From the sequence record OP889247.1: a stretch of 64,000 nt of DNA; one strand, 5' to 3'. A program made the translations under genes and the position numbers. This document shows positions 43,391 to 62,392 of the stretch, piece after piece (position 1 is the first letter of the stretch; every line of letters starts with the position of its first letter). A model generated the notes under the pieces. It had not been told where the DNA came from, made no database searches, and saw only the letters and a list, made by a program, of their open reading frames with translations.

Positions 43391-43945
43391 ATGGAAGATT
43401 GTAAAGAGACTAAAAGTTGGGTTTGTTACACTGACGGTTCAAAATTAGGTGAAAACACCACTGACGGCGGAAATGGCGGATGGGGATTTCACGCCATTTT
43501 CGGAGAATTGATAGTAGAGAAGTCTTGTGGGTATTTTAAGACTACTAATAATAGGATGGAGATATTAGCTATTATCTCTTTCCTAGAGGAGTTTCAAGAA
43601 CCCACTAAGGTTACTATACGAAGTGATTCTCAGTACACTATCGATGCTGTTACTAAATGGATCTATGGTTGGATTAAGAATGACTGGGTAACTTCTCAAG
43701 GACAACCTGTAAAGAACAAAGATCTATTTGAACGATTGTTTAAATTAGTAAAGTTCCATACAGTGAAGTTTGAGAAGGTAAAGGCCCACTCTAATATTCC
43801 CGGTAATGAAAGAGCCGACACTTTAGCTAAGGAAGCTGCTGGTAATCCAACATTAATCGATGAGGGTTATATCCCTCCTGACCCTAATGAAGTTAAACTG
43901 ATTGTTGTAAAGAAACCTTGGTGGATGAAACATAAAAAGAAATAA
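43391..43945 (+). CDS. rnhA: Ribonuclease HI
   Basis: YTDGS, TNNRMEILA, SDSQY, VKAHS..PGNERAD.LA, the canonical RNase HI motifs. Confidence 0.95.
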   Translation: MEDCKETKSWVCYTDGSKLGENTTDGGNGGWGFHAIFGELIVEKSCGYFKTTNNRMEILAIISFLEEFQEPTKVTIRSDSQYTIDAVTKWIYGWIKNDWVTSQGQPVKNKDLFERLFKLVKFHTVKFEKVKAHSNIPGNERADTLAKEAAGNPTLIDEGYIPPDPNEVKLIVVKKPWWMKHKKK

Positions 43946-43994
43946 AATAACTCTACTTACTCCTAAGGGAGTAAGTAGAGTTTAAATTAATTAA
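43943..43994 (-). repeat. Conserved cassette-end element, copy A (inverted)
   Basis: Reverse complement reads TTAATTAATTTAAACTCTACTTACTCC-ctta-GGAGTAAGTAGAGTTATTTTA. Confidence 0.95.
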
Positions 43995-44001
43995 TTTTTA
44001 T

Positions 44002-46170
44002 TTATCTCGAAAAGTTATTATGTTCCACAAATTCAGTATAATTAGTTTTAGAATATGGTTTATTGCAATTTATGGTTAAATTATTATAAACCTCAGCTGT
44101 AGTAGAGTAGTCATAACTTATTCCGATATCAAAGTTAGATACCCTACAACCAGAAACTCTATAGTTATTTGAAGATAACCCAGCACCAGCTGCTTTATCA
44201 CCGTCTTTTTCTACTAAAGTATCTATAAAAATAGAATCATTAGAGACTAACGCCCCATAAGTCCCACCTATGGTTTTTAATCTTACCGATTTTATTTTAA
44301 CAACCCCAGAAGAAGTAGAACTTGAGGTAAGAATTGGAATCCCTGAACTTGTGATGTAACCGCCACTCATATCGAAAATTAAAGCATCGTGTGTGGATTT
44401 GAATAATCCTACAGCTGTACACGTTATTTCTGATCCGCCATCAATAACAATAATCCCGGTAGCTGCCAAAGAAACAATACCGTTACCAGTATTAATAATT
44501 TTAAAATTATTAATACTTAGAGTTTCTATATTACCAGAAACAACCACCAACCCAGCACCAGTTCCAGTGAGACTGTAAACAGAACTATTGCTTATACTCC
44601 CCCACCTAGAATTTTCTACCTCTATACCTCCGTAGTTGATTACATCAGGGATATTGCCCTTTATTCTTATCTCTGTGTTACTTACTTTGAAAAAGTCGGA
44701 CCCGCTATAGAACTTTATTGGTGCCGCGTTTCCTATTGTTTCTATTGAACTGTTCACAATCTTAGTGTTAGCAGCCGAAGACGTCACACCGATCCCGGTG
44801 GCATTCTTAATTGTCACATCGTTTATAACTGTATTAATACCGTATGTTTCTAGTGACGCTAAACAATTAGTGCCGTCAATTAATGAGTTAGAAACAGAAC
44901 AATTGGGAGCCTGAACCTTAATACCACGTTTTTTAACACCACTAACTTTTACATTGTTAATGTTAAACTTACTTCTATTATCTATATTAGTGTATCCACC
45001 ATGAAATAGCTGAATACCATCACTATCTTCGGCCGGATCTATACCGCCAGAACTGACATTTTTAACTGTACCAGAAATACTTACGTTCGGAGTAGAAGCG
45101 GCGTCGTTAAAAGCCACTAAAATCCCTCTTGCTGTCCCACCACTATCTCCAATCGTCCCATTAGATTTTGCCATTATATCGGAAACATGCGCATTGATGC
45201 TAGCAGTTATGTTTTGGTTTATAACAGAACTAGAAGATTTATATAAAGCCACACCGATACACTGTTCTGTATCGGTATTATTTTTAATATCTGTTACAAC
45301 ACAATCTATCATGACCTTATCACTAGAAACCACCAAACCTACATCAGTAAATAAACCGTATTGTAAGTTATCGCATTCTCTACCATCTAAATTAGTTATT
45401 ATTTTGGCAGGTCTGTCACAGTAAATTGCTGCGTTTAGTTCGGTCTGCATATTTAATCCAGTTGGTTTAAATATACTTTTAGCAGCAAGAAGAGATCCCT
45501 TTAAGTTAAGCTGTTTATTATGGATATAAACAGATCCAGGTAACCCATTTATCTCTTTATTTGTACAATACGCGAATGCTGCGTTTATTGCCAGGGATGA
45601 TTCTTTACCACTTTTTGCACCGAAGTATTCTATAAACATTTTTTGGTTTGGGTATAAAACTGCGGTATTCCCATTCGAAGCATCTAGTATACCATACCCA
45701 TCGGGAACACCTCCCTTTACAACCTCAAATAAAGCACCAGCGCGATCTGATAAAAACAAAAAAGATCCAATGTTAAATAGACCGGATTTTATTTCCTCTA
45801 CCGAACTGACACCGATATAAGAAGAATTTTTCTCCACTACTTTCCAGCCTTTTTTACCACCTGGGGTAGGAGAACTATTAGCTTGAACTACATAAGGTAA
45901 TTTACCATTCCAACTGTACCAGTATCCATCCGTTGGATAAAAGACACATTTATCCCGATCACCAATACCTAAAGTTCCGCCACTAACAAAATCAAACCCA
46001 GCTGGTTTAAACCCAACATCTTTCAAAGCTTGCTGTACAGTTTTATGTTGCTTACCGAAACGATCCTGCCACAAAGCAGCCGGGGAATTCATCGCATAAT
46101 CAAACGAAATAGCGTTGTCTTGTAAGTCTTCATTCGCTGAAGATCCAATAGGGTTTTGTGTGAAAAACAT
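44002..46170 (-). CDS. Tailspike/depolymerase TSP1 (beta-helix type)
   Basis: NPIGS..DL.DN..DRFG anchor, Tail_spike_N-like module (GFKPAGFDF..GG...WYSWNGKLP), G.KSG..SS.AINAA start of a beta-helix, Asn/Ser/Gly-rich strands. Confidence 0.85.
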   Translation of the reverse strand: MFFTQNPIGSSANEDLQDNAISFDYAMNSPAALWQDRFGKQHKTVQQALKDVGFKPAGFDFVSGGTLGIGDRDKCVFYPTDGYWYSWNGKLPYVVQANSSPTPGGKKGWKVVEKNSSYIGVSSVEEIKSGLFNIGSFLFLSDRAGALFEVVKGGVPDGYGILDASNGNTAVLYPNQKMFIEYFGAKSGKESSLAINAAFAYCTNKEINGLPGSVYIHNKQLNLKGSLLAAKSIFKPTGLNMQTELNAAIYCDRPAKIITNLDGRECDNLQYGLFTDVGLVVSSDKVMIDCVVTDIKNNTDTEQCIGVALYKSSSSVINQNITASINAHVSDIMAKSNGTIGDSGGTARGILVAFNDAASTPNVSISGTVKNVSSGGIDPAEDSDGIQLFHGGYTNIDNRSKFNINNVKVSGVKKRGIKVQAPNCSVSNSLIDGTNCLASLETYGINTVINDVTIKNATGIGVTSSAANTKIVNSSIETIGNAAPIKFYSGSDFFKVSNTEIRIKGNIPDVINYGGIEVENSRWGSISNSSVYSLTGTGAGLVVVSGNIETLSINNFKIINTGNGIVSLAATGIIVIDGGSEITCTAVGLFKSTHDALIFDMSGGYITSSGIPILTSSSTSSGVVKIKSVRLKTIGGTYGALVSNDSIFIDTLVEKDGDKAAGAGLSSNNYRVSGCRVSNFDIGISYDYSTTAEVYNNLTINCNKPYSKTNYTEFVEHNNFSR

Positions 46171-46231
46171 ATAAAACCTCTTTGATTAATAGGTAGTTAA
46201 AGAAGTCATTTAAGCCTCTTTAAAAATCAGT

Positions 46232-46242
46232 TCATAAGATCT
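46232..46242 (-). promoter_or_regulatory. Late-promoter-like header AGATCTTATGA upstream of TSP1
   Basis: Same 11-mer at 54286..54296 upstream of TSP2; contains TATG, the reported phiKZ late consensus. Confidence 0.45.
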
Positions 46243-46284
46243 GAGTTAATGATTATTGAATTCTTTACTCTGTCAAATAAAAAA

Positions 46285-46318
46285 TAACCTACCTAACCAA
46301 TTACGGTTAGGTAGGTTA
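46285..46318. terminator. Hairpin between divergent TSP1 and HTH genes
   Basis: TAACCTACCTAACC-aattac-GGTTAGGTAGGTTA. Confidence 0.65.
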
Positions 46319-46345
46319 ATAATCAGTGTAATTAAAAATTTACTG

Positions 46346-46377
46346 TGTTCTATATTTTTTCAGATAGATATTATTAA
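46346..46377 (+). promoter_or_regulatory. Conserved promoter-like motif, copy 2
   Basis: Identical 32-mer to 5866..5897. Confidence 0.7.
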
Positions 46378-46419
46378 GATGGTAAACCAAGTAAGTTATT
46401 TCAAAAACAGTCTAGGAGA

Positions 46420-46797
46420 ATGGGTATGCGTTTTAAACACGATAGCTTAATGAAAGTAAAGAAGGTTTTAATGACCCGTGTAAGTTACATTATTAACTTA
46501 CAAATCCGTAATGGTGAGAAAGCTGTTGATCTCGCTACCAAGTACAACATCAACCCTACTACTATTTCTGAATTGAAACTTCAGAAAGTTGATAAGATGA
46601 GTTTAGATCGTCTTATTACTTGTGTTGATAAAATGGGATTAGAATACTCTATCGGGATAGCTAACTCTAATGGTTATAAAACGATCGATGTTTCTTTACC
46701 CAAGTATGACAATGATCCAGTAATCCGTCAGATTGACATGAAACGTCATCAACACAAGCATAAATCTAACGATAACGTAACAACTCAAGCGGTATAA
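46420..46797 (+). CDS. XRE/HigA-like helix-turn-helix protein
   Basis: LATKYNINPTTISELKLQKVDKMSLDRLITCVDKMG fits the XRE HTH pattern. Confidence 0.6.
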   Translation: MGMRFKHDSLMKVKKVLMTRVSYIINLQIRNGEKAVDLATKYNINPTTISELKLQKVDKMSLDRLITCVDKMGLEYSIGIANSNGYKTIDVSLPKYDNDPVIRQIDMKRHQHKHKSNDNVTTQAV

Positions 46798-46801
46798 AGA
46801 G

Positions 46802-47143
46802 ATGATCAAAGAAATTCTATCCAATAGTGAATGTGTAGAGAAACAACTCATTAAAACATTCCCCGAGTTTAAACAGCAGTTCCCTGAAGAGTTGAAGCTA
46901 ACTTTGATCAATATGATCAAACACGATGAAACGGTTACTGTATTCCCTAACACTGTGGAAGTTCAAAACAGTACCTTTAAGCAACTTGTAATCAAAATCT
47001 GTAAAGAGTGGGTAATCTTTATTACTGAAGAGTTGACCGAATACACTTGTTTCTATCGACAAGCTAATTTGGATAAACTTAAATCTTTTATTGCACTACA
47101 CAGTGAACAAACACTAGTAGGAGAATTATACGCTAAGTGTTAG
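46802..47143 (+). CDS. Hypothetical protein
   Basis: 113 aa in operon. Confidence 0.65.
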   Translation: MIKEILSNSECVEKQLIKTFPEFKQQFPEELKLTLINMIKHDETVTVFPNTVEVQNSTFKQLVIKICKEWVIFITEELTEYTCFYRQANLDKLKSFIALHSEQTLVGELYAKC

Positions 47144-47156
47144 GAGATTTGTTAAA

Positions 47157-47258
47157 ATGAAATTAACAAAACGTTCCGGAACAGTTATTGTAATTACAGT
47201 AGTGTTCTGGGTAATAACTGGGATAGTTGGGTACCAACTTTACCATGCCGCAGTGTAA
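47157..47258 (+). CDS. 33-aa single-TM peptide (not in the ORF track)
   Basis: MKLTKRSGTVIVITVVFWVITGIVGYQLYHAAV; SD AGGAG. Confidence 0.6.
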   Translation: MKLTKRSGTVIVITVVFWVITGIVGYQLYHAAV

Positions 47259-47272
47259 AAGGAAACAATGAA

Positions 47273-48610
47273 ATGACTAAGAAAAACAAAGAAGCTAAAT
47301 CAACAGAAGTTCCCCCGGTAGAAACTACCGAAGTTGTGGTTGAAGAAATTAAAGATCAATCAGAAGCTACTTTTGATTTCTCGGAACTGCCGAAACCAGA
47401 AACACTCCCCTCTGTAGAATTAGAAAATGTTGAGGTTAAACCCAAGTACGTTCTCGATAATATTACCAACAAACCAAAGCTGAAAGTTGGTGATAAAGAA
47501 ATTGAACTTAAAGAAGTTCAACTCACCACTGACTATTTCTTTAACATTACTGGATATCGTTATCGTCCAAGTCATTACCGGTTTAGTAACCACTACAATG
47601 AAAATGAAATGAAGAAGGTTGAAGGTCACCCTAAATGGTACGCTGCTGAAGTTAACGGGATTCAATTCTTCCTGACCCAAGGTTCTGTTGTAGAAGTCAA
47701 GCGCCTTGATAACCAAACTAGTTATAACGGATCCAACACCGATGGTCGTAAACCTTGCGTTAAAGTAGCTTACTCAACCATCATTGCTGATAACCTTTCT
47801 GTCCGTGGATTTGAAGAGAATAGACTATTTAATGTAGGGTTGATTGGGGGCTGGATTTCCTTTGACAAGGTTTCTTTGTCAGATGGTAAGGTGGATATTG
47901 AAAACTCTATTGATCTTACAAATATGGATCTAAGTGTTTTCAGTATTACTCGCGCAAACTCTCTTAATGTTAATCGGTTTAACGGAAGTCGAGTTTCATT
48001 GGATGGGTTTAATTCGATCAACATTTACAACAGTAGTTGTTACTGTCATAACGATAGTTCGTTCATTCTTGAATTGTCAAATAAGAAGATGGTCGACCTT
48101 TCCATTGGAAAGACTACTCTTAGTGATTTCAAGCTTGTTAATTATGGTCATACTCTTTGCGAGGGATTAGATGTTAACTCTAAAATCGTTATCGATAAAC
48201 GTATTGACTATGGTTATATCACTGGGCTGAAACCTGTTCCGTTTGTCCGAGTCGGTCGTAGTGGAATCTTGGTAGGTAATCAGTACTTCACCGCTGTGGA
48301 GATGTTGGGTAAAATCAGTACTACTACTTTGCACGAAATTACCCCTATCTCTCCATGGTACCCAACCCCGACCTTTGGTTCTCCAAGGACACTAGATCCG
48401 TTGGTTGGTCGTGATACTGCCGATAAAGCGTATAACGTAGCTTTTAATGCTGGCGGAAAGGGGAAGGTTCCCGAACATCAACCTGATCAAATCGTAGTGG
48501 ATGTTGTTCAAACTACAATTGATCAAATTCGATCTAAAGTTAAAGTGTTTGCTTTGATCGACACTCTGAATCCTGGTGACTTTGAATATGCCGATGAATA
48601 TCCGTACTGA
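47273..48610 (+). CDS. Hypothetical protein, acidic N-terminus
   Basis: 445 aa, SD AAGGA. Confidence 0.75.
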   Translation: MTKKNKEAKSTEVPPVETTEVVVEEIKDQSEATFDFSELPKPETLPSVELENVEVKPKYVLDNITNKPKLKVGDKEIELKEVQLTTDYFFNITGYRYRPSHYRFSNHYNENEMKKVEGHPKWYAAEVNGIQFFLTQGSVVEVKRLDNQTSYNGSNTDGRKPCVKVAYSTIIADNLSVRGFEENRLFNVGLIGGWISFDKVSLSDGKVDIENSIDLTNMDLSVFSITRANSLNVNRFNGSRVSLDGFNSINIYNSSCYCHNDSSFILELSNKKMVDLSIGKTTLSDFKLVNYGHTLCEGLDVNSKIVIDKRIDYGYITGLKPVPFVRVGRSGILVGNQYFTAVEMLGKISTTTLHEITPISPWYPTPTFGSPRTLDPLVGRDTADKAYNVAFNAGGKGKVPEHQPDQIVVDVVQTTIDQIRSKVKVFALIDTLNPGDFEYADEYPY

Positions 48611-49295: not shown

Positions 49296-49300
49296 GTTAG

Positions 49301-49328
49301 AGTGCAACTGGGAGTTCCCAGTTGCACT
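49301..49328 (+). terminator. Hairpin terminator
   Basis: AGTGCAACTGGGA-gt-TCCCAGTTGCACT. Confidence 0.7.
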
Positions 49329-49336
49329 ATTTTACC

Positions 49337-49367
49337 TGTTCTATATTTTTTCAAGTAGATATTATTT
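49337..49367 (+). promoter_or_regulatory. Promoter-like motif, variant copy
   Basis: TGTTCTATATTTTTTCAAGTAGATATTATTT. Confidence 0.65.
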
Positions 49368-49402
49368 AAGTGTAAATCTAGGAGTGTATAAAGGAAACTA
49401 AG

Positions 49403-50200: not shown

Positions 50201-50501
50201 TAGTCAAGCAAAAATTGAAGCATTTCTCAAATCTAGTTTTGAAGCCAGTTATAATACAGGTGAAACTCTGGATCTTTGCCTTTCCGATAAACTTCATCTT
50301 ACTGTTACACTACATGCTGATAGTAAGCAGGGTTGGATTCAACCTTGGTTGTTTTTAAAGAACGGTAAAAACTACTGGGAAGACAGTACTGGATATTACC
50401 TTAATACCATTTACTGTAAATCGAATAACACTGACAAGGTTGCAAATATTGTTTCGCATCAACTTCACCAAGTTGTATTGAATCAACTTTGTAATCTTTA
50501 A
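50172..50501 (+). CDS. Hypothetical protein
   Basis: 109 aa, SD AAGGA. Confidence 0.6.
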   Translation: MNQLQLSVVNSQAKIEAFLKSSFEASYNTGETLDLCLSDKLHLTVTLHADSKQGWIQPWLFLKNGKNYWEDSTGYYLNTIYCKSNNTDKVANIVSHQLHQVVLNQLCNL

Positions 50502-50539
50502 TGCCAATTTAATTAGTCTAGATAAAAGGAATATAGAAA

Positions 50540-53203: not shown

Positions 53204-54220
53204 ATGAACTTACATAGGGAGATTGATAAAAGACTACTTGCGTATAAACCAATCTCTGTTACACTTAATTTTGATTGGGATAAAATGTCTTATGACGAAA
53301 GAGTGCTAGCAAGACATAATTACATTGAAGAACAGAAAAAGAAAGATCCTAACTATGTTGGATATGATTTTCCTGAACATTTTAGCGGAACTTCGCATAA
53401 CGTCGTTGTAATTTTTAACCGCTTAGTTAGTACAATAGGACAAATATTTTCATTAGTAAATAATAAAATTTATATTTCATTCGGAGGGAATGGAAAGTGG
53501 TATAGATCAATCGGGTTATGGAAAAATGGTAAATCTATTGGTATAAAGGTCCACCGTATCGTCGCTTGTACCTTTATACCAATTCCAGAACATTTGAAAA
53601 AATTTCGTAATGAAATAGTAGTTAACCATAAGGATGATGTTAAATATAATAACATCAGATCTAATCTTGAATGGTGTACACATAAAGAAAACACAATAAA
53701 GGCTATAGAAACAGGTACGATGTCATCGTCCTCTTTTAAGCTTACCATTACAAGACCAGGACGGTATTTTGGAAATTTTTATTACTTCGACAACCTCAAC
53801 AGCCTAATAGATCATGGTTTCAATCCCAGTAGAGTTTATGGGTTTATGAGGGAAGGGATAAAGTACCTATGTGGGAATTGGGAAACCGTAACTAAAGATG
53901 AAATAATAGGTAAACCTATAGGGATGGGAAAAGATGTCATTGAATATATTAAAGACCCCATTTATGGGTTTGTGTCTGCCACTGGTAGTGTCGGTACTAT
54001 TCTTTCCGAAGGTCCTTGTAAAGGGGAGTGTTTTGCTCTTTACGGTAGTACACAATTAAGAAAATGGGGGTTTGATGCGGGAGAGGTTTGTAAAGTTATA
54101 AAGGGCAGACGTAAAAATTATAAAGGCTGTAAATGGGAAAGAATGACCAGAGAAAAAACTGTAGATATTCCCATTGGGTTAACAGAAGCTCAAAAAGAAC
54201 ATATATTTGGGAATAAGTAA
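53204..54220 (+). mobile_element. Free-standing HNH homing endonuclease
   Basis: VHRIVA.TF, VNHKDDVKYNN..SNLEWCT..EN; two NUMOD1-like C-terminal units (GFNPSRVYGFMREG / GFDAGEVCKVIKG). Confidence 0.85.
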
Positions 54221-54227
54221 TAACATA

Positions 54228-54261
54228 AACTCTCTACTCCCAATTAAGGGAGTAGAGAGTT
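54228..54261 (+). terminator. Hairpin terminator; inverted identical copy of 31582..31615
   Basis: AACTCTCTACTCCC-aattaa-GGGAGTAGAGAGTT. Confidence 0.85.
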
Positions 54262-54352: not shown

Positions 54353-56713
54353 ATGTCCAGTAACAAACCTTTCCCATCGTCAGATCTTGACGTATTTAAA
54401 GAAAACAGTCTTATATTAGATAACTTTGTCAACAGTCAGGAAAATGAACACCCGGATCGTTTTGGTCGTAAGAGACCAACTATTACAGGGATCATCAAAG
54501 AAGCTTTTAACGTTCGTACTGATATTTCCAATATGAATGAAACTCTTATTGGTCAAAGTCGTTGGGATGTGGTTCCTAAGAACACCAGTTTGAGTTTAGG
54601 TGGTGATAACGGAGCTTTGAATAAACAAGCTCAAGCTTTGTTTAACCGCACTGTAATGTTAAAGGTTCACACAAGAGAAGCGTTGCGTAGAACTTATCAA
54701 GAAGTTGGTCTAGTTTTAGTACCTGGCAGCTTTGAAGATGGTGGTGTTTTAGAAACTATTACTGATGTTCTATTAGAAGAGAAAACAGGTAAAGTTTATA
54801 GCTGGACAGGTAGTTTTCCGAAAGTTGTCGCTAAAGGAACATCACCAACTAGTGAGATTGAATTTTTAGAACAAAATATTAAATCGCTTTATGGTATGTT
54901 ATCAAGAACTTTTGATAACGATGGTATTGTTTTTAACACTGTAGAGTTAGAAAATACTTCACTACCCATCGGAACAACAATAAGGGTTGATGGGCGGTAT
55001 GGGGGAAGATTTAAAATTATACCCAGAGGGTCGAAGATCCCTGACGGGTACTTTTTACTATCGGTCGGGGGTGATAAACTCGCCGAGTTGCAATTTTCTA
55101 ATATTCTTAAGCCAGAATGGTTTGGGGTTTTTTCCAACACACCAGGAACATTAGAATCTGAAACTGCCGATGGTTTAAATGCCATGTTTTCAGCATTAAA
55201 AAATAAAACCGGGTTGGTTTTTGAACTTAATGGCGTTTATTATGTTAATAAACAAATTACAGTTCCATTCTGCGAAACTACTTCTCCGCATATCCTAAGA
55301 ATTTTTACTATTTCAGGTAAAAATTCTATAATAGCAAGCTCACACCAAGAAAAAACACTAGTAATTAAAACTTCTTCAGATATCGGTCAGCGTAATTATG
55401 GATTTTCAGTAGAGGATTTAACACTTAGAAATACCGTAGGTTGGGTAAAGGGTACCGGGCTTTATATCGAGGGGTCTTTTAGCCCTATATTTTCTAGGGT
55501 TTTTTGTCATAACTTTGACAAATGTTTTGAAATTTACTGTTCATCCGAAGTAATATTTGATAAATGCGTCGCTACCACGTGCAACTATGGTGTGTATGGT
55601 GACCAGCTGGCTAACCCTAATGGAGTTAATGGTAACGATTACTCTGTCATTACTTATAATCAGTTTGTTTGTTTCGGATTTGAAAAATGTGCCATTAGAT
55701 CTAATGGTGGTGGTTCAGCCAAACATATTGGCGGGACTATGGCATCCCCCGGGCTAGCAGCTAGGAGCTTTATACAATATCAAGGTTCTATAAGAGACGT
55801 TGTGATAGAAGACGTTCTCTTGGAATGTCAAAATGTTACATTGGATGGTTGTATATCATTCCTAGGGAATGGATTAAAACGTTCCATTAAAATATCTGGG
55901 GTGGTACAAGAGGTTATTTCTTCACCCAATAATGTTCTTATAAGGGCAGATGGTGTTGAAAATATTACTATAGAAAACATTCCATTTACGGTTCAAGGTG
56001 ATGTATTTGAACATATAAAATATGTTCGCATTGACGGAGCCAAGGTTGTTTCCTTTATCAACAATGCTCGTTCTTATAACTATTTGAATAAAGTAGACTT
56101 ATATGATGTAGAAGAGGTTTTTGTCGATGGATACAATTTTATAGAAATTAACCCCCAATCTACGATAAGATACACAACTACGGGTGAACCGGTTGGAATA
56201 TACACACTTAATAGTTATCAGCCAGGTGAACTATTGGACCATACTGGGAAGGCTGGATTTAAATGTTCAACGGTATATAACCGTCTACATTTTTCGGAAT
56301 TAATGGCTTTTCTTGCATCTAAAAAACCAATGATTTCTTGTGCCAAAGTTTTAACTCTTAGTGATGCATTGGGGGTTAAATTAGTCAATGGTAACGTTAA
56401 CAAAGGTCAATATACCTATGGTTGTATTCCTGGAAGATGGAAGACACAGTTTTTTGTACTCCCTACTTCTGGATTAACCGTCGTAGATAGCAGTGTGAAT
56501 GGACCTGTATATTTTAATATCGCAGGTTGTTCAGGAGTTTATATGTTAACGCAAGAAAATTTTTATAACCCGCAGATTGCGATCCCAGAGAGTGAATTAA
56601 ATAACATCACCGGTTGGCCTGTGTATAAAACTTTGTACAATTCAGATACCACACCCAATACACCAATAGGTTGGGTTAATACATATGGTGGTAAAAAGGC
56701 TATTAAAATTTAA
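54353..56713 (+). CDS. Tailspike/depolymerase TSP2 (start moved to ATG 54353)
   Basis: PFPSSDL....N...LD.FVNS....DRFG anchor, Tail_spike_N-like module (GSFEDGG.L...DVLL...GKVYSW.GSFPK), PEWFG..TADGLNA beta-helix entry; SD AGAGGA. Confidence 0.85.
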   Translation: MSSNKPFPSSDLDVFKENSLILDNFVNSQENEHPDRFGRKRPTITGIIKEAFNVRTDISNMNETLIGQSRWDVVPKNTSLSLGGDNGALNKQAQALFNRTVMLKVHTREALRRTYQEVGLVLVPGSFEDGGVLETITDVLLEEKTGKVYSWTGSFPKVVAKGTSPTSEIEFLEQNIKSLYGMLSRTFDNDGIVFNTVELENTSLPIGTTIRVDGRYGGRFKIIPRGSKIPDGYFLLSVGGDKLAELQFSNILKPEWFGVFSNTPGTLESETADGLNAMFSALKNKTGLVFELNGVYYVNKQITVPFCETTSPHILRIFTISGKNSIIASSHQEKTLVIKTSSDIGQRNYGFSVEDLTLRNTVGWVKGTGLYIEGSFSPIFSRVFCHNFDKCFEIYCSSEVIFDKCVATTCNYGVYGDQLANPNGVNGNDYSVITYNQFVCFGFEKCAIRSNGGGSAKHIGGTMASPGLAARSFIQYQGSIRDVVIEDVLLECQNVTLDGCISFLGNGLKRSIKISGVVQEVISSPNNVLIRADGVENITIENIPFTVQGDVFEHIKYVRIDGAKVVSFINNARSYNYLNKVDLYDVEEVFVDGYNFIEINPQSTIRYTTTGEPVGIYTLNSYQPGELLDHTGKAGFKCSTVYNRLHFSELMAFLASKKPMISCAKVLTLSDALGVKLVNGNVNKGQYTYGCIPGRWKTQFFVLPTSGLTVVDSSVNGPVYFNIAGCSGVYMLTQENFYNPQIAIPESELNNITGWPVYKTLYNSDTTPNTPIGWVNTYGGKKAIKI

Positions 56714-56760
56714 TTAATTTAAACTCTACTTACTCCTTATGAGTAAGTAGAGTTATTTTA
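56710..56760 (+). repeat. Conserved cassette-end element, copy B
   Basis: TTAATTAATTTAAACTCTACTTACTCC-ttat-GAGTAAGTAGAGTTATTTTA; contains the TSP2 stop codon. Confidence 0.95.
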
Positions 56761-56777
56761 TATTATTTATTTTTGAC

Positions 56778-56792
56778 GATTTTATGTACTTT
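56778..56792 (+). promoter_or_regulatory. Late-promoter-like header GATTTTATGTACTTT
   Basis: Same 15-mer at 59536..59550 and 14-mer at 61510..61523; contains TATG. Confidence 0.6.
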
Positions 56793-56818
56793 GTTATTAA
56801 CAGAGAAGGTAAGAACTT

Positions 56819-59080
56819 ATGAATTCCACTGGTAACGATTTAGAATCCAATGACATCTTGGATTTTGAAGATAACTGTGAAAACTTAGATGTTTTAATGA
56901 ATGCTGATCAAGACTATTGGACTGATCGTCTTGGTAATAAACGCCCTACAATTGATTACGGTTTGCGTATGGCTGGGTTTACCCCTGCTGGGTTTGACTT
57001 CACCACAGGTGGTGTTTTAAAGAATGGTGACAGAAACAAGTGTGTATTTAACCAAGCTGATCAAACTTGGTATAGTTGGTCAGGAGATCTTCCTTATAAT
57101 GTAATTGCTGGAAGTACGCCTGGGGAAGGTTGGAAAGTAGTTGTTTATACAGCTGATTTTTTAAGTTTTATTAAACCAGTAACTTGGTCAGGATTTGCTG
57201 GTGGTGCTGACTCTAGCGGGAATAACGACTCCAGCAATTCATTTCAAGCGGCGGTGATGCAAACCAAGGGACAAAACGTTAACCCTTCTATATATAATTC
57301 AGTACCTACACCAGATGTTATAACATTAAGAATTCCTACTGGTAAATATAAAATAAATAAAAAGATTTCTCCCAAGGGTAAACTTGTAATATGGTTATGT
57401 GATAGCGGGGTAGAAATAGACAATCACGATAACCTGTGTGGTAAGATAATACAGAATGGGTTACGTCACAATGCTATAACATCTGGTATATTGGATAATG
57501 CGGTTGGGTTTTCTGTTTCCGTAAATAGGGGGCTCGGTAAACCTGCTGCAATACAGGGAATAACAGACCCTTCTAATTTGTCAAGCGTAACAGAACGTGA
57601 CGCAGTAGGCTTCTATGCCGATTGCGGTTCTAGGCCACCAAATATCACAGTCGCAATGTCTTCTTATACGGCGACTAAAGCTCTCCCTAATGTCCCTGTC
57701 GACACATCCAGTTTAGTTAGGGGTATGATTATAGATACCGACAATGGTTACGCTGGTGTAGTAGATCACTGGGCTGAAGATGGTAAGGAGATAACAGTTT
57801 CAAAGGGATGGTATAAAACACCCAGTAATACCGGTCCAGAAATACCCCCAAATGCCGGATTTAGAGTAAATGATATAACTAAGATTTGGGCTCATAACGC
57901 CAATTTAGAACTAGTAGAAAACGCTAATACCACTAGAGCAGCTGGTTTCGAACTCGGGCTTAGAAATTCTAAAAATAATTTCACGGATCCAGATAACACT
58001 ACCGACTATATGTGGGGTTATGATGTTGTTGGGTTTGGGCCTTATAACGCTACTGTTGGGTTTATTCAAAGAACAGGGGTGTTGCGTGGGTTTGAATCTT
58101 CAGGTGCTCTCAAAGAAGGGTATGTTGTCACCAAACGTGGCGGAGTGTTTCCGACCACAGCCATTGGTACTAGATGTAACTCTTTTGAACAATTAGCATT
58201 ACGTCCTAACGGTATTGATTCATGTTTTAAAGTCATTAACACTGGCGACGTAGATATAGGTGGACAAGTATACCCAGGAACCCGTTCAGTAAGAATGCGG
58301 TCAAGTGGGCTTAATAATGATTTTGATACAAGATTTCAATCGATAGGCGGCGGGGAAGGTTCCGGATTAGGTACATTTAGGGTATCTGCCAACTTTACAG
58401 AAGTTACTGGTGGTCTACGTCCAGTTACTACTAACGCTTCCCCGTGTGGAACATCCTCCAATGCATGGTCCGGCGGACACACACAAACTGCATTTATTGT
58501 AACTTCTGACGAGAATGAGAAAACGTCACCAGAAGAAATTACTGACGATATGCTTGATGCCGCCGGTGAAGTTGATTGGTGTTTATTCCAATATCTTGAT
58601 AGCGTAAAAATTAAAGGTGAAGATGGGGCAAGATGGCACTTTGGGGGTGTGGCTCAGCGCTTTGTTGAAGCATTTAAACGACACCATTTAGACCCGTTCA
58701 AATATGCTTTTATTTGTTATGATAAATGGGAAGATGAATATGAATTAGTACAAGTCAACGAGGGGGAGTGGCATTCAGAAATAGTCACCGTCGAGGAACC
58801 TGTTAGAACCGAGCGTGTTTTATACTGTGATGGAACTCCATTGTTAGATCAGAATGGTGAAAAATATAGTACTATAAGCACGAGTATCGTTAAGAAAGAA
58901 ATAGAAATTACAGTTCCCGATGAACCAGTGTTTGAAAAGGTATTGCGGGTCAAAGCTGGAGAAAGGTATGGGATACGGTACGATCAGGCGATCATTCTTA
59001 AACAGAAACAAATAGAAAGGGATCATAATCGTTTAATAAGTGCCTTAGAAGCTAGAATATCCGCTTTGGAAAATAAATAA
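56819..59080 (+). CDS. Tailspike TSP3 with C-terminal intramolecular chaperone (peptidase S74-like)
   Basis: Anchor plus Tail_spike_N-like module; IVT/SDENEK autocleavage-type site, RWHFGGVAQ, YGIRYDQ, terminal coiled coil. Confidence 0.85.
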   Translation: MNSTGNDLESNDILDFEDNCENLDVLMNADQDYWTDRLGNKRPTIDYGLRMAGFTPAGFDFTTGGVLKNGDRNKCVFNQADQTWYSWSGDLPYNVIAGSTPGEGWKVVVYTADFLSFIKPVTWSGFAGGADSSGNNDSSNSFQAAVMQTKGQNVNPSIYNSVPTPDVITLRIPTGKYKINKKISPKGKLVIWLCDSGVEIDNHDNLCGKIIQNGLRHNAITSGILDNAVGFSVSVNRGLGKPAAIQGITDPSNLSSVTERDAVGFYADCGSRPPNITVAMSSYTATKALPNVPVDTSSLVRGMIIDTDNGYAGVVDHWAEDGKEITVSKGWYKTPSNTGPEIPPNAGFRVNDITKIWAHNANLELVENANTTRAAGFELGLRNSKNNFTDPDNTTDYMWGYDVVGFGPYNATVGFIQRTGVLRGFESSGALKEGYVVTKRGGVFPTTAIGTRCNSFEQLALRPNGIDSCFKVINTGDVDIGGQVYPGTRSVRMRSSGLNNDFDTRFQSIGGGEGSGLGTFRVSANFTEVTGGLRPVTTNASPCGTSSNAWSGGHTQTAFIVTSDENEKTSPEEITDDMLDAAGEVDWCLFQYLDSVKIKGEDGARWHFGGVAQRFVEAFKRHHLDPFKYAFICYDKWEDEYELVQVNEGEWHSEIVTVEEPVRTERVLYCDGTPLLDQNGEKYSTISTSIVKKEIEITVPDEPVFEKVLRVKAGERYGIRYDQAIILKQKQIERDHNRLISALEARISALENK

Positions 59081-59481
59081 TGATTTTACAAAATTTCCTT
59101 TCTCACTATCAATACCAACCTGATCCAATTAAGAAAGACATTTGGACAATTCCTAACAAAGTTAACAATCAATATCTTGATGATTGCGATGGCTTTTGTT
59201 TAGGCATTCTTTACTATGTTCTTGCTAATAGCTCGCTTCTTACGTTCTGGTATTTGTTACTGTTTACAGACACTAGAATTTATTATGTGATTACTAGTAA
59301 AAACATTGGCCATGTGGTATTGAAACACAAAGGTCTTTATATTGACACTTATTCAAAAGCTTGGGTGAGTAAAGAACAGATGTTGTCTTATGGACATAAA
59401 TTCCATTGGTCTAAAATGTTCTTTTTCTGGCAAGTCGCTTTGAAGATGTTAATTGGTAAGATCTTAGTTAAAATGAAATAG
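59080..59481 (+). CDS. Transglutaminase-like cysteine protease candidate (BTLCP-like)
   Basis: DDCDGF...GHVVL...YID resembles the GDCEDY / GHAVL / D triad; TAATG-coupled to TSP3. Confidence 0.5.
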   Translation: MILQNFLSHYQYQPDPIKKDIWTIPNKVNNQYLDDCDGFCLGILYYVLANSSLLTFWYLLLFTDTRIYYVITSKNIGHVVLKHKGLYIDTYSKAWVSKEQMLSYGHKFHWSKMFFFWQVALKMLIGKILVKMK

Positions 59482-59492
59482 TAATAAATACT

Positions 59493-59522
59493 CTCTACTT
59501 CTCCAATTAAGGAGAAGTAGAG
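59493..59522 (+). terminator. Hairpin terminator of the same family
   Basis: CTCTACTTCTCC-aattaa-GGAGAAGTAGAG. Confidence 0.75.
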
Positions 59523-59580
59523 GGATTCTTTTATTGATTTTATGTACTTTAGTTTAACAGTAAAGAGAAGGTAAAGAATT

Positions 59581-61449
59581 ATGAGCTTTAACACAGGTAA
59601 CCCTATAGGGTCGATTTCGGAAGAAGATTGCTACGACAACATGGCTAATCTTGACCAAGCGATGAATAGCACCGATCCAACTTGGAGGGACAGGTTTGGA
59701 GTTGAGAAGCCTACTATTGACGCAGCTTTGAGATCCACAGGATTTATGCCAGCTGGATTTGATTTTGTAACTGGCGGAACACTTCAACCTGGAGATCGTA
59801 ATAAAGCTGTTTATAATCCGGCCCCAAATGGCGATAATAATTGGTATCGTTGGAATGGTGTATTCCCGAAAGATATTGCAGCTAACAGTCAACCTAATCC
59901 CAAAGATGAAAATAATTGGGTTCCAGTTCTAATTAAAACAGGAACTGTTGAAAGAGAAGCACTTCGTAGAACTTATCAGGAAGTTGGTTTAAATCTTGTT
60001 GATGGAAGTTTTGAAGAAGGTGGTACCTTACAATCAGCAACAGATGTTCTCTTGGAAGAAAAAACAGGTAAAGTTTATAGCTGGTCTGGTGTGTTTCCTA
60101 AAGTAGTTAATAAAGGAACTTTACCAACTAGCGAAGCTGAATTTGTTGATAAAGCTTTAGATTCACTGGCGGAGAATGTGGTTGGCGTTGATGGGAATGT
60201 TCCAACTACCATTCAAATAGTCACACATAGAGGGAGTACTCTATTTACCAAAACCACAGATGAGGCCAAACTGGGAGACGTCGTTATAGGAAACGTTGTA
60301 TATAGACTCTCACCATCTAATATTGAATCGTCGACTGGACTTTCAGACACCCCTATCAATGGAGGGTGTGGGTGGCGGCAGCTAATGCAGTTAGAAGAAA
60401 AGATGTTGAAATCCAGAGATGCACCATTACAAATAACCGTTGACGATATATCTACCAATAGGACTCTTAAAGCTTGGCGTCTAGCCGAAGGTATCTGTGA
60501 TCCAGCCGCAGCCGGGTCGTTTATGATGGGTTATGATTCTGAACCACAAACACAAGTAATAGGTTTTGACTCATACGATAAAATAGGAACTTACCAGGCT
60601 AGAGATTCTGTAGCATTATTTTCCCAAGTTCAAGGTCAGCTCCCAATAGCTCAAGGGTCATTTAACTATTCTGACACAAGTGTTACCGGCCCCGAAATCC
60701 AAGCACAATGGGAAAAAATAAAGGTAGGAATGATTTTTGATACCAATCTTGGTAACACCACCTTGTTCAAAGGGGCAGTTATCATAGATAAAGTCGATCC
60801 ATATACACTGATAGTTTCACCATGGACTGGAGCGAATGGAGGGGTGGTATCAGCACCAGCAAATGGTACCAAAGGTGTAATAAACCAGAGAACCCATTTA
60901 TGGGGATTGAATTCCAATACAATAGTTAATAATGGTGCCATCCAAGGAATTGGTTCTGAAATAGGAATGATGTGTTTAACTACCGGGAGTGGAACAAATT
61001 CCAAGGTTATTTATGCAGTAAATTTAGGTGGAGAAGCACCAGAATTTGGGTTTTTTGCTAAAGGACCTTTCAGAAAGGGATATACTGCTTTATCTTCGGA
61101 AGAATATGCATTTTACTCTAAGGGATTAGGGGGGGTTAACTCTTCACATTTCAGGGCTGTAAGCAGTACTGGGGAATTAGAATACGACTACGGTCCAAAT
61201 GGGGTAAGGTACGAAACGGTGGATTTCGCTTATTGTGGTGTTAGTGGGACTCTCACCACCAGACCACTTTCCATCGGGACCGGAAATAATCTTGTACTTT
61301 CCCTACCTACTGTAAAACCAGGAAGGAAATTGGCATATAAAAACGCTTCGGGCACCACACACACTGTAAACAATGTCACCGTACCATCTGGGGGGTATAT
61401 TGTGTTTGTTTGTGATGGAACAACTTGGTTAACAATGTTTAAAATATAA
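59581..61449 (+). CDS. Tailspike TSP4 with two tandem Tail_spike_N-like modules
   Basis: NPIGS anchor, module A (GFMPAGFDF) shared with TSP1 and TSP3, module B (REALRRTYQEVGL) shared with TSP2; body homologous to TSP3. Confidence 0.85.
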   Translation: MSFNTGNPIGSISEEDCYDNMANLDQAMNSTDPTWRDRFGVEKPTIDAALRSTGFMPAGFDFVTGGTLQPGDRNKAVYNPAPNGDNNWYRWNGVFPKDIAANSQPNPKDENNWVPVLIKTGTVEREALRRTYQEVGLNLVDGSFEEGGTLQSATDVLLEEKTGKVYSWSGVFPKVVNKGTLPTSEAEFVDKALDSLAENVVGVDGNVPTTIQIVTHRGSTLFTKTTDEAKLGDVVIGNVVYRLSPSNIESSTGLSDTPINGGCGWRQLMQLEEKMLKSRDAPLQITVDDISTNRTLKAWRLAEGICDPAAAGSFMMGYDSEPQTQVIGFDSYDKIGTYQARDSVALFSQVQGQLPIAQGSFNYSDTSVTGPEIQAQWEKIKVGMIFDTNLGNTTLFKGAVIIDKVDPYTLIVSPWTGANGGVVSAPANGTKGVINQRTHLWGLNSNTIVNNGAIQGIGSEIGMMCLTTGSGTNSKVIYAVNLGGEAPEFGFFAKGPFRKGYTALSSEEYAFYSKGLGGVNSSHFRAVSSTGELEYDYGPNGVRYETVDFAYCGVSGTLTTRPLSIGTGNNLVLSLPTVKPGRKLAYKNASGTTHTVNNVTVPSGGYIVFVCDGTTWLTMFKI

Positions 61450-61450
61450 T

Positions 61451-61501
61451 TTAATTAATTTAAACTCTACTTACTCCTAAGGAGTAAGTAGAGTTATTTT
61501 A
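61451..61501 (+). repeat. Conserved cassette-end element, copy C
   Basis: TTAATTAATTTAAACTCTACTTACTCC-taa-GGAGTAAGTAGAGTTATTTTA. Confidence 0.95.
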
Positions 61502-61678
61502 TATTCTTTATTTTATGTACTTTTTGAACAATAGTTTACATCGTTAACTATTGTAAAGTTAACAGAAAAGATAGTAAATAGTTTTGAAATATTAAATAGT
61601 TCTCAAACCTGTTGGTAATATTTTTTATTACTTATCTTACTATTTACTGTTATACTAGGCTTAAAGGATAATATTTAA

Positions 61679-61861
61679 ATGAATAAAGATCAAGCTTTTG
61701 CGGCGCAGCGTTTTCTTAGTCGTGTAGACCTTAAAGGTAGCGAGGTACCTGCCTTTATAGACGTAATGGACTCTTTAGAGGAAATTATTGTGTCACAATC
61801 TACTAAAAATACTCCTAATCCAGAAGATAAAACACCGGAGGTGGGTGTAAATGGAAATTAA
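61679..61861 (+). CDS. Small hypothetical protein
   Basis: 60 aa, SD AAGGA. Confidence 0.6.
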   Translation: MNKDQAFAAQRFLSRVDLKGSEVPAFIDVMDSLEEIIVSQSTKNTPNPEDKTPEVGVNGN

Positions 61862-62348
61862 ACCTAACTTAAGTTGTCTTTCTATAATTTTGAAAGATAA
61901 AAGATCAACATCAATATGGTTTAATGACAATTATTATTTAAAAAGTAATGAGTTAACAAGTGAAGAAATAATTTCCGCGATATTAAGTTCTAACACTATC
62001 CCAGTTTTTAATGAAATCCCCGATATACTGTTGTATTTTTCTTATTATGGAAAAACAATTAATGTGTCATGGGATGGGGTTAATGTTAATGTTTCGGGAA
62101 ATACGGAATTAAATAAAGAGATTGAGACTTGTCTAATTGACATCGGAAAGGGTTTAGTTTTATCCTACGATCCAAACATCATTACTGTTGATAGTTCTTT
62201 ATTAGAAGGTTCAATAGATTTCAAGAAGGGATTATCAATCCGTGATAATCCATACAAGAATAAAGAACAAATAAAAAATGATGACTGGATTTACGGCTGG
62301 GAACTTGCCAAATCTTTTAATCCAGATTCAATATTAAAATTTAATTAA
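61851..62348 (+). CDS. Hypothetical protein
   Basis: 165 aa, SD GGAGG, stop codon lies inside repeat copy D. Confidence 0.65.
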   Translation: MEIKPNLSCLSIILKDKRSTSIWFNDNYYLKSNELTSEEIISAILSSNTIPVFNEIPDILLYFSYYGKTINVSWDGVNVNVSGNTELNKEIETCLIDIGKGLVLSYDPNIITVDSSLLEGSIDFKKGLSIRDNPYKNKEQIKNDDWIYGWELAKSFNPDSILKFN

Positions 62349-62392
62349 TTTAAACTCTACTTACTCCTAAGGGAGTAAGTAGAGTTATTTTA
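62341..62392 (+). repeat. Conserved cassette-end element, copy D
   Basis: TTAATTAATTTAAACTCTACTTACTCC-taag-GGAGTAAGTAGAGTTATTTTA; holds the stop codons of both convergent genes. Confidence 0.95.

What the first reader, a model, noticed from the sequence alone, without database searches (positions are those of the whole stretch)
43943..62392. Repeat-anchored receptor-binding-protein cassettes: one 51-52 bp palindromic element closes four horizontally variable genes
Seen: four copies (43943..43994 inverted, 56710..56760, 61451..61501, 62341..62392) share an exact 27-bp left arm TTAATTAATTTAAACTCTACTTACTCC and an exact 20-bp right arm GAGTAAGTAGAGTTATTTTA; only the short loop differs. Each copy sits at the 3' end of TSP1, TSP2, TSP4 or the 61851 gene, always with the TTAATTAA side facing that gene. 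Copies B and D supply the stop codon of that gene. Copies A and D also supply the stop of the convergent gene. Other terminators in the window share the hairpin style but not these asymmetric flanks. Inference: conserved 5' header/N-terminal modules plus this 3' element form two homology arms, so whole depolymerase bodies could be swapped as self-terminating cassettes. This would be an integron-like logic for host-range change, with no integrase visible in the window.
Basis: partly seen in the sequence, partly recalled or inferred. Interest (0 to 1): 0.82.

Follow-up and report, generated by a model that had tools for sequence, protein, structure and literature searches.

The report
Repeated terminator hairpin beside tailspike genes
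A 51-base hairpin that most likely stops transcription is repeated next to every tailspike gene of an Aeromonas jumbo phage, and related phages show it sometimes marks the point where tailspike-region DNA has been exchanged, much as promoter-terminator repeats do in T4-like phages.

Summary
The window is Aeromonas phage AVP1 (OP889247.1, bases 1-64000), a phiKZ-like jumbo phage. The four copies are real and exact. A fifth copy lies outside the window at record 144870-144920.

The element (X) looks like a strong intrinsic terminator: an AT-rich box with TAA stops, a 14-15 bp stem (RNA -20 to -24 kcal/mol) and a U-rich tail. It is one variant among about 69 intergenic palindromic hairpins at gene ends.

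All five copies adjoin members of a five-gene tailspike family. The fifth member, AVP1_0147, is annotated only as hypothetical. PS2 has X exactly twice, both upstream of tailspike genes.

- Copies B and E are conserved across the genus. They head a module of terminator, spacer, ribosome site and tailspike N-terminus.
- Copies A, C and D are lineage-specific and lie inside the variable blocks, so they travel with the tailspike bodies.
- Only at B is X the conserved 3' boundary of a variable body.
- PS1 and PS2 are 100% identical up to the X stem, then drop to 56-72% at its loop.
- PS1/PS2 use a second repeat (Y) in the same way at the TSP1 and TSP4 ends.

The cassette idea is partly supported. 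The integron analogy is not. The closest known system is PeSL-mediated shuffling in T4-like phages.

The parts
43943..43994 (-). Copy A of element X, at the convergent junction between RNase H and TSP1. It is lineage-specific: AVP1 and ACP1 only.
   Evidence: Exact arms. RNA hairpin -23.4 kcal/mol, z -6.8. pAEv1810, PS1 and PS2 carry hairpin Y here, and homology to them ends at 43946.
56710..56760 (+). Copy B of X, between TSP2 and TSP3. It is present at this position in all five Ferozepurvirus genomes examined.
   Evidence: Homology with pAEv1810, PS1 and PS2 resumes at 56702-56713. pAEv1810 has a compensatory stem change. The PS1/PS2 identity break falls in the loop of their B copy.
56761..56818 (+). 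U-rich tail and conserved spacer with a ribosome site, leading to the TSP3 start codon.
   Evidence: The spacer is alignable among B and E copies of all phages and contains a conserved TTTTATG box.
61451..61501 (+). Copy C of X, 3' of TSP4. AVP1 only.
   Evidence: Similarity to the B/E spacers continues to about 61529.
62341..62392 (+). Copy D of X, at the convergent junction between ORF 61851 and the gene at 62390-65539. AVP1 only.
   Evidence: Relatives carry Y or another hairpin here, and homology resumes at 62388-62389.
44002..46170 (-). TSP1. The conserved N-terminal module is encoded at 45844-46170; the variable body is at 44002-45843.
   Evidence: Weak Tail_spike_N and PHROG tail-spike hits. 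Breakpoints.
54353..56713 (+). TSP2. The conserved header runs to about 54745-54848; the variable body runs to 56709.
56819..59080 (+). TSP3. Header to 57141; variable body 57142-59078. It has no X at its 3' end and abuts gene 59080-59481.
   Evidence: (Tail_spike_N and Peptidase_S74).
59080..59481 (+). Conserved 133-aa gene that forms the 3' boundary of the TSP3 variable block. It is followed by its own hairpin at 59493-59522.
59581..61449 (+). TSP4. Header to about 59937-60074; the body is unique to AVP1.
   Evidence: The body matches a solved tailspike depolymerase, E 6e-13.
61502..62340 (+). AT-rich interval (29.6% GC) between direct copies C and D. It holds two orphan ORFs, 61679-61861 and 61851-62348.
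54228..54261 (.). A different repeated terminator hairpin, upstream of TSP2. It is the right edge of the replaceable HNH block at 53204-54220.
   Evidence: The same family is at window 31582 and record 215303, and at the same three places in PS2.

Best explanation
X is an intrinsic transcription terminator that can act in both directions. It is one sequence variant in a genome-wide family of palindromic terminators typical of phiKZ-like phages.

In the RNA, a 14-15 bp stem followed by AUUUUAUAUU would stop the polymerase after the tailspike message. The AT-rich left flank carries TAA in two frames on each strand, so reading frames that run into it end there.

As DNA, X is part of the repeated flanks of a five-member tailspike family. 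At slots B and E it heads a conserved unit made of terminator, spacer, ribosome site and tailspike N-terminal anchor. At A, C and D it closes a tailspike block.

These 51-110 bp repeats are among the few stretches shared between otherwise unrelated tailspike blocks. General homologous recombination or gene conversion between slots and between co-infecting relatives therefore sometimes resolves in them. X thus acts secondarily as a module boundary, in the manner of PeSL cassettes in T4-like phages.

Most tailspike body replacements cross over in the N-terminal module and in the next conserved sequence downstream. That sequence is X only in slot 2.

Shown: the repeat, the hairpin, its positions, the tailspike association and the breakpoints. 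Inferred: termination activity, and that recombination uses the repeat.
For: - Terminator features: every copy was called terminator-like. RNA folds are -19.8 to -24.4 kcal/mol with z -5.3 to -6.8.
- Genome census: 79 perfect hairpins with stems of at least 10 bp; 67 lie outside proxy ORFs, 62 of those within 150 nt of a gene end, and 17 at convergent junctions. The window has 22, against 0-1 in each shuffle.
- A compensatory stem change occurs in pAEv1810 copy B.
- phiKZ-like phages are reported to have motif-sharing terminators, 15 of 132 bidirectional (PMC11512511).
- Tailspike association: AVP1_0147, just downstream of copy E, is a tailspike paralog (32% identity to TSP2, E 8e-23). Four of the 8 hairpin sites flanking tailspike genes are X, against 1 of 61 elsewhere, P = 4e-4. 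In the whole PS2 genome X occurs twice, both upstream of tailspike genes, and Y occurs twice, both 3' of tailspike genes.
- Boundary role: homology resumes at the left edge of B. PS1 versus PS2 is 100% identical for at least 700 nt up to the X stem, then 56-72% from the loop for about 250 nt.
- Spacer types after X do not follow slot or phage phylogeny. For example, PS2-B is 98.7% identical to AVP1-E but only 75% to its sister PS1-B.
- Metagenome contigs join the left context of E to genes of the B slot.
- Six of 20 breakpoint clusters lie within 25 nt of a hairpin, P = 1.4e-5.
Against: - No transcript data exist for this phage, so termination is inferred from sequence alone.
- Copies A, C and D are inside the variable blocks, so for them X need not have been a crossover site.
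- AVP1 versus ACP1 shows no change in divergence at A or B.
- Donors of the tailspike bodies were not found: tblastn identities are 30% or less. No swap can therefore be traced end to end.
- The metagenome junctions at X could be assembly chimeras at a repeat.
- Breakpoints at hairpins are partly expected simply because hairpins sit between genes.
Confidence: 0.7

Rival explanations
1. X is only a relic. The tailspike paralogs arose by duplication, each copy carried its terminator along, and the repeat plays no part in later exchange.
For: All five copies adjoin paralogs of one family. Other terminator variants are also repeated with their flanks at non-tailspike sites, for example at 31582 and 215303. 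A, C and D lie inside variable blocks.
Against: The paralog headers are only 32-50% identical as protein, yet the X copies are identical over 47-51 nt, so the copies are much younger than the gene duplications or have been homogenised. A, C and D are absent from the orthologous sites of relatives. The PS1/PS2 identity break falls inside the hairpin. Spacer types are reticulate.
Confidence: 0.15
2. X is a dedicated cassette-exchange site, selected so that whole tailspike bodies can be swapped between slots as self-terminating units.
For: At B the element is the 3' boundary. The left arm closes unrelated ORFs in different frames. In PS1/PS2 a second repeat, Y, carries 180-350 nt of shared flank (88% identity) behind two unrelated bodies. 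Contig L015 and the 3' end of pAEv1810 TSP5 carry an X-type hairpin plus a remnant of the RNase H tail in another slot.
Against: No integrase or other site-specific recombinase is annotated among the 247 features. X is a perfect palindrome with no attC-like asymmetry. The 3' breakpoints of slots 1, 4 and 5 lie beyond the terminator, and that of slot 3 is at the start of the next gene with no X. No body type was found in two different slots among five phages.
Confidence: 0.08
3. X acts at the DNA level as a protein-binding palindrome. It could be an operator for the helix-turn-helix protein at 46426-46797, or a recognition site for the HNH endonucleases that sit nearby.
For: X has perfect 15-bp dyad symmetry. 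HNH genes lie next to hairpins upstream of tailspike genes: AVP1_0056, PS2_0010, PS2_0172 and contig L016.
Against: About 69 dissimilar intergenic palindromes occupy equivalent places at gene ends. A compensatory change keeps the pairing but alters the sequence. Loop sequences vary freely. The U-rich tail is conserved on the side expected for a terminator.
Confidence: 0.04
4. X is a small mobile palindromic element (REP- or MITE-like) that inserts at TTAA- or TAAA-rich sites.
For: The junctions of X with the RNase H and gp63 stops overlap by TAAA. Copies appear at new sites in single lineages.
Against: No transposase or RAYT-like gene is annotated. New copies always arrive together with new flanking genes, never as a bare insertion into otherwise conserved DNA. 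X is absent from GTDB genomes and IMG/VR.
Confidence: 0.03

Closest known systems
PeSL (promoter-early stem-loop) regulatory cassettes of T4-like phages (Arbiol et al. 2010, PMC2839356; Comeau et al. 2014, PMC4122927)
   Same: Both are short repeated intergenic units. Each starts with the stop codon of the upstream gene in an AT-rich stretch, contains a terminator stem-loop, and ends with the ribosome site and start codon of the next gene. Both sit beside the most variable genes, flank orphan ORFs (compare the C-D interval), and coincide with replacement breakpoints between close relatives.
   Different: No sigma-70 promoter is detectable in X, and phiKZ-like phages transcribe with their own polymerases (PMC4666361). 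AVP1 has 5 copies, not about 50. The copies are tied to one structural gene family, not to early orphan-gene regions. No mini-circles are known.
Motif-sharing intrinsic and bidirectional terminators of phiKZ-like phages (201phi2-1 and phiKZ transcriptomes, PMC11512511)
   Same: Dozens of stem-loop terminators share sequence motifs, some are bidirectional, and long stems give strong termination. AVP1 has about 69 such intergenic hairpins with shared CTCTAC-type stems.
   Different: Those studies describe transcription only. A single variant confined to tailspike genes, or a role as a recombination boundary, is not reported in the passages read.
Multi-tailspike phages with a conserved N-terminal anchor and exchangeable bodies (CBA120 TSP1-4 and G7C gp66 type, Pfam Tail_spike_N PF18668; Klebsiella phage receptor-binding protein modularity, PMC8262889)
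   Same: The four window tailspikes carry Tail_spike_N-type modules, above Pfam's cut-off in TSP3 and TSP4 and just below it in TSP1 and TSP2. Variation between relatives starts right after the N-terminal module.
   Different: Those systems are defined at the protein level. A shared repeated terminator at the DNA level is not part of their description.
Tail-gene cassette of the K1-5, K1E and SP6 phages, with a conserved intergenic region between tail-protein genes (recalled from my own knowledge of Scholl et al. 2001 and 2004; not retrieved here)
   Same: A conserved upstream region and a short conserved intergenic stretch with dyad symmetry bracket exchangeable tailspike genes.
   Different: These are small T7-like podoviruses with one or two slots. 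The comparison rests on memory and was not tested.

Membership tests
Intrinsic (factor-independent) transcription terminator | Stable stem-loop in the transcript | tested here: met
   14-15 bp stems, -19.8 to -24.4 kcal/mol, z -5.3 to -6.8, no shuffle folds as well.
Intrinsic (factor-independent) transcription terminator | U-rich tract directly 3' of the stem | tested here: met
   ATTTTATATT follows all copies on the side away from the closed gene. All four window copies pass the terminator scan. The reverse direction has a weaker A/U-rich tail.
Intrinsic (factor-independent) transcription terminator | Placed just after a stop codon and oriented with the gene | tested here: met
   The gene stop lies from 10 nt upstream of the element to 8 nt inside it for TSP1, TSP2, TSP4, ORF 61851 and AVP1_0146.
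Intrinsic (factor-independent) transcription terminator | Pairing kept by compensatory change | tested here: met
   pAEv1810 copy B has T>C in the left arm and A>G in the right arm at paired positions. This is a single case.
Intrinsic (factor-independent) transcription terminator | RNA 3' ends form there during infection | not testable with these tools
   No transcript data for AVP1 or its relatives were available.
PeSL-type mobile regulatory cassette (T4-like phages) | Contains a sigma-70-like early promoter | tested here: not met
   No promoter-like site was called in or just after copies A, B or D. The only call after C is a weak 9/12 match 140 nt downstream. Promoter-like sites in the region are fewer than in shuffles, 57 against 67.8.
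PeSL-type mobile regulatory cassette (T4-like phages) | Unit runs from the upstream stop codon in AT-rich DNA, through the stem-loop, to the ribosome site and start codon of the next gene | tested here: met
   True of copies B and E and of their orthologues in ACP1, pAEv1810, PS1 and PS2. Not true of A and D, which sit at convergent junctions.
PeSL-type mobile regulatory cassette (T4-like phages) | Replacement and indel breakpoints between close relatives fall in the cassettes | tested here: inconclusive
   Met at B and in PS1 versus PS2. Not met at A, C and D, which lie inside the replaced blocks.
PeSL-type mobile regulatory cassette (T4-like phages) | Circular excision products between neighbouring copies | not testable with these tools
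   This needs read-level data from phage DNA.
Integron gene-cassette system | Integron integrase next to the cassette array | tested here: not met
   No integrase or recombinase is annotated among the features of the record. Pfam found none in the ten proteins scanned.
Integron gene-cassette system | attC-type imperfect palindrome with conserved core sites, and promoterless cassettes all in one orientation | tested here: not met
   X is a perfect palindrome. TSP1 is inverted relative to the others. Each tailspike keeps its own conserved 5' module.
Modular tailspikes with Tail_spike_N anchor (CBA120 and G7C type) | N-terminal anchor domain present and conserved, with C-terminal body variable between relatives | tested here: met
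   PF18668 hits are above Pfam's 25-bit cut-off in TSP3 and TSP4 and just below it in TSP1 and TSP2. Breakpoints fall 100-165 codons into each gene. Bodies are unrelated between phages.

The most novel reading that the evidence does not exclude
X in AVP1 and ACP1, and the analogous Y repeat in PS1 and PS2, are maintained as portable 3' handles. Together with the shared N-terminal modules, they would let receptor-binding bodies be exchanged between non-orthologous tailspike slots and between co-infecting Ferozepurviruses. This would be a PeSL-like shuffling system specialised for host recognition in a nucleus-forming jumbo phage.
Probability: 0.2. Interest if true: 0.7.

Novelty: new variant of a known kind. 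Interest (0 to 1): 0.45.

Why it matters
Tailspikes decide which bacterial strains a phage can attack, and how large phages re-assort them is only partly understood. This locus offers a concrete case that can be checked by sequence alone. One terminator variant marks all five tailspike slots of a jumbo phage. Sister phages switch from identity to divergence inside it. A second, unrelated repeat plays the same positional role in related phages. If the pattern holds in more genomes, repeated regulatory hairpins would be a general guide to module boundaries in phiKZ-like phages, as PeSLs are in T4-like phages. They would also help annotation: the fifth tailspike gene here was found through the repeat. 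If the pattern does not hold, the element is simply a well-defined strong terminator family.

Tried and rejected
- Exact-pattern scans for the hairpin found nothing in IMG/VR or in GTDB genomes. A looser core pattern found one IMG/VR contig (L022) with no similarity to AVP1.
- The best hit in CF8 (genus Chaoshanvirus) is an ordinary convergent terminator beside a polymerase-like gene. X proper is therefore confined to Ferozepurvirus and four metagenome contigs.
- Rfam has no family in 43000-63500.
- Donors of the tailspike bodies were sought by tblastn. The best foreign matches are 30% identity or less. ORF 61851 has no homologue in the phage collection. No swap could be traced to a source.
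- No body type is shared between different slots in the five phages.
- A test for a phiKZ-type late promoter (TATG) in the spacers was not informative. TTTATG lies upstream of only 9 of 231 proxy genes. B lacks the upstream half of the early-promoter-like consensus.
- AVP1 versus ACP1 shows no divergence step at A or B.
- TSP body composition is close to the genome average, so there is no compositional sign of recent foreign origin.
- Housekeeping: re-fetched parts of the AVP1 record because I misread how locus files are stored.
- My first script contained a line that would have joined the record's pieces in memory for coordinate scanning. It stopped with an error before reaching that line. 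All later scans were run piece by piece.

Full report
**Identity of the window.** Megablast places window 43000-63900 at 100% identity on Aeromonas phage AVP1 (OP889247.1, 234,448 bp, genus Ferozepurvirus, host A. veronii), with window and record coordinates equal. The record carries a tubulin-like gene, split RNA polymerase subunits and a phiKZ-like internal head protein, so this is a phiKZ-like jumbo phage. Relatives in the phage collection are ACP1 (about 95% identity), pAEv1810 (about 90%), and PS1 and PS2 (about 82%).

**Observation.**
- Both arms occur exactly four times in the window at the stated places. No extra hits appear at up to three mismatches, and shuffles give none.
- Only the loops differ.
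- The annotation and the ORF list confirm that the TTAATTAA side faces TSP1, TSP2, TSP4 and ORF 61851.
- The stops of TSP2 and ORF 61851 lie in the left arm, in different frames.
- The stops of RNase H and of gene 62390-65539 overlap the end of the right arm. Relatives that carry another hairpin at those junctions keep the same stops, so those codons belong to the neighbouring genes and overlap X by about four bases.

**What the element is.**
- Each copy folds as RNA into a 14-15 bp stem of -19.8 to -24.4 kcal/mol (z -5.3 to -6.8), in either direction.
- Each is followed by ATTTTATATT on the side away from the gene it closes, and each passes the terminator scan.
- The AVP1 record holds 79 perfect hairpins with stems of at least 10 bp. 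Of these, 67 lie outside proxy ORFs, 62 within 150 nt of a gene 3' end and 17 at convergent junctions. Shuffled sequence gives 0-1 per 64 kb, against 22 in the window.
- Many share CTCTAC-type stems, and other variants are also repeated with their flanks. AACTCTCTACTCCC occurs three times, at the same three orthologous places in PS2.
- This matches published transcriptomes of phiKZ-like phages: 132 termination sites in 201phi2-1, most sharing sequence motifs, 15 of them bidirectional (PMC11512511).
- pAEv1810 copy B carries a compensatory pair change in the stem.
- Rfam has no family here.
- X is therefore best read as a strong terminator that can act in both directions. All 51 bases are parts such a site needs: a stop-rich AT box, the stem and the U-tail.

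**Genome-wide distribution.**
- AVP1 has a fifth copy, E, at record 144870-144920. It matches 25/27 and 20/20 of the arms and has the same 15 downstream bases as C.
- E follows the small gene AVP1_0146 and supplies its stop. It lies 55 nt upstream of AVP1_0147, which is annotated as hypothetical.
- AVP1_0147 is a fifth tailspike paralog. Its N-terminus is 32% identical to TSP2 (E 8e-23) and 49% identical to the first 45 residues of TSP3. The ACP1 orthologue is noted as a putative tail fiber.
- All five copies therefore adjoin the tailspike family. Four of the 8 hairpin sites that flank tailspike genes are X, against 1 of 61 elsewhere (P = 4e-4).
- In the complete PS2 record X occurs exactly twice, both upstream of tailspike-family genes. 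A second repeat, Y (stem GTTCACCCAACTC), also occurs exactly twice, both at tailspike 3' ends.
- X is absent from IMG/VR and GTDB genomes and present in four metagenome contigs.

**The tailspike genes.** The four window genes carry the Tail_spike_N domain, above Pfam's cut-off in TSP3 and TSP4 and just below it in TSP1 and TSP2. TSP3 also has the endosialidase chaperone domain, and the TSP4 body matches a solved tailspike depolymerase. Their N-terminal modules are paralogous at 32-50% identity.

**Breakpoints against relatives.**

| Slot | Conserved header ends | Variable block | Where homology resumes | Position of X |
|---|---|---|---|---|
| TSP1 | encoded at 45844-46170 | 43947-45843 | RNase H stop | A is inside the block; pAEv1810, PS1 and PS2 have Y there |
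| TSP2 | 54745-54848 | to 56709 | 56702-56713, the left edge of B | B is the 3' boundary |
| TSP3 | 57141 | 57142-59078 | start of gene 59080 | no X |
| TSP4 | 59937-60074 | to 62388 | stop of gene 62390-65539 | C, two orphan ORFs and D are inside the block |
| TSP5 | 145276 | to about 147347 | thymidylate kinase stop | private terminator inside the block |

X is the shared 3' arm only for TSP2. Elsewhere the terminator travels with the body. B and E are present at the same sites in all genomes examined. A is shared only with ACP1, and C and D are unique to AVP1.

**Evidence that the repeat is nevertheless a place of exchange.**
1. PS1 and PS2 are 100% identical for at least 700 nt up to the left stem of their B copy. 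Identity then falls to 56-72% from the loop onward for about 250 nt.
2. The roughly 58-nt spacers between X and the next start codon come in four types whose distribution follows neither slot nor phage. PS2-B is 98.7% identical to AVP1-E and 96.8% to PS2-E, but only 75% to PS1-B.
3. Metagenome contigs join the left context of E (AVP1_0146) through X to genes that follow B in the isolates: the TSP3 stub, the gp59 homologue, an HNH gene and a TSP4-type header. Another contig, and in diverged form the 3' end of pAEv1810 TSP5, carry an X-type hairpin plus a remnant of the RNase H tail next to the thymidylate kinase gene. These metagenome junctions could be assembly chimeras.
4. In PS1 and PS2 the unrelated TSP1 and TSP4 bodies are followed, in inverted orientation, by 180-350 nt of shared non-coding flank ending in Y (88% identity). 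This repeats the AVP1 A/D arrangement with a different sequence.
5. B and D share 35 nt of left flank that is read in different frames by two unrelated genes.
6. Six of 20 breakpoint clusters in 40-66 kb lie within 25 nt of a hairpin (P = 1.4e-5). Hairpins do mark intergenic DNA in any case.

**Evidence against a stronger reading.**
- No body type is found in two slots, and donors are unsampled.
- AVP1 versus ACP1 shows no step in divergence at A or B.
- No integrase is annotated.
- Free-standing HNH endonuclease genes sit beside hairpins upstream of TSP2, TSP4 and TSP5 in various phages. They offer an alternative source of local recombination.

**Comparison with known systems.**
- The closest described system is the PeSL cassette of T4-like phages. 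A PeSL is an AT-rich stretch with the upstream stop, a stem-loop terminator, a promoter, and the ribosome site and start of the next gene. PeSLs flank orphan genes and mark replacement breakpoints between close relatives (PMC2839356, PMC4122927).
- Copies B and E have that layout, and the C-D interval (29.6% GC, two orphan ORFs) looks like a PeSL-flanked orphan.
- X lacks the defining sigma-70 promoter. phiKZ-type phages use their own polymerases, whose late promoters are defined only by TATG (PMC4666361). A conserved TTTTATG box lies in the spacers, but its role could not be tested.
- X works like a PeSL but is not a member of that family.

**Verdict.** The element is a tailspike-associated terminator variant. 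The cassette interpretation is partly supported, and the integron analogy is not. I rate it a new variant of a known kind, of moderate interest.

Noticed in passing
AVP1 record 144976-147252 (L003:30976-33252), outside the window: AVP1_0147, annotated as hypothetical, is a fifth tailspike paralog. Its first ~100 codons are conserved in ACP1 and pAEv1810, its body is variable, and it has a private terminator.
   Followed up: yes
window 11359; record 82501, 124686, 139528, 174278, 180993, 204813 and others: About a dozen copies of a long AT-rich consensus ending in TTTTCAAACC TATATTAC lie upstream of genes. They look like early promoters of the phiKZ type.
   Followed up: partly
window 53204-54261; PS2 L021:14209-15290 and L013:32580-33660: Free-standing HNH endonuclease genes sit directly beside terminator hairpins upstream of tailspike genes. 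In PS2 two HNH paralogs (80% nt identity) are each followed by the same hairpin (stem CAACACCTTCC), and one is inserted between the E hairpin and its spacer. The AVP1 HNH block is replaced by other genes in relatives, and its right edge is at hairpin 54228-54261.
   Followed up: partly
PS2 L013:17278-17307 and 36193-36222; PS1 L014:4482-4511 and 21358-21387: A second repeated terminator, Y, with 180-350 nt of shared flank, sits in inverted orientation behind the unrelated TSP1 and TSP4 bodies. ACP1 has X at one end of the tailspike region and Y at the other.
   Followed up: yes
window 31582-31615 and 54228-54261; record 215303-215336: Another terminator variant (stem AACTCTCTACTCCC) is present three times with similar flanks, at the same three orthologous sites in PS2.
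   Followed up: partly
PS2 L013:31676-32068; PS1 L014:17997-18392; pAEv1810 L012:21346-23384: In PS1 and PS2 the TSP3 slot holds only a 130-aa N-terminal stub. In pAEv1810 TSP4 is annotated as two adjoining ORFs.
   Followed up: no
window 61502-62340: The interval between direct copies C and D is 29.6% GC, against a genome average of about 38%. It encodes two ORFs with no homologue in the phage collection.
   Followed up: partly
PS2 L013:31276-31570 and 35862-36192: The PS2 TSP2 and TSP4 bodies are each followed by their own GC-rich hairpin (AAAGCCCC...GGGGCTTT) and about 300 nt of non-coding DNA before the resident X or Y terminator. This looks as if imported bodies brought a terminator of their own.
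   Followed up: no
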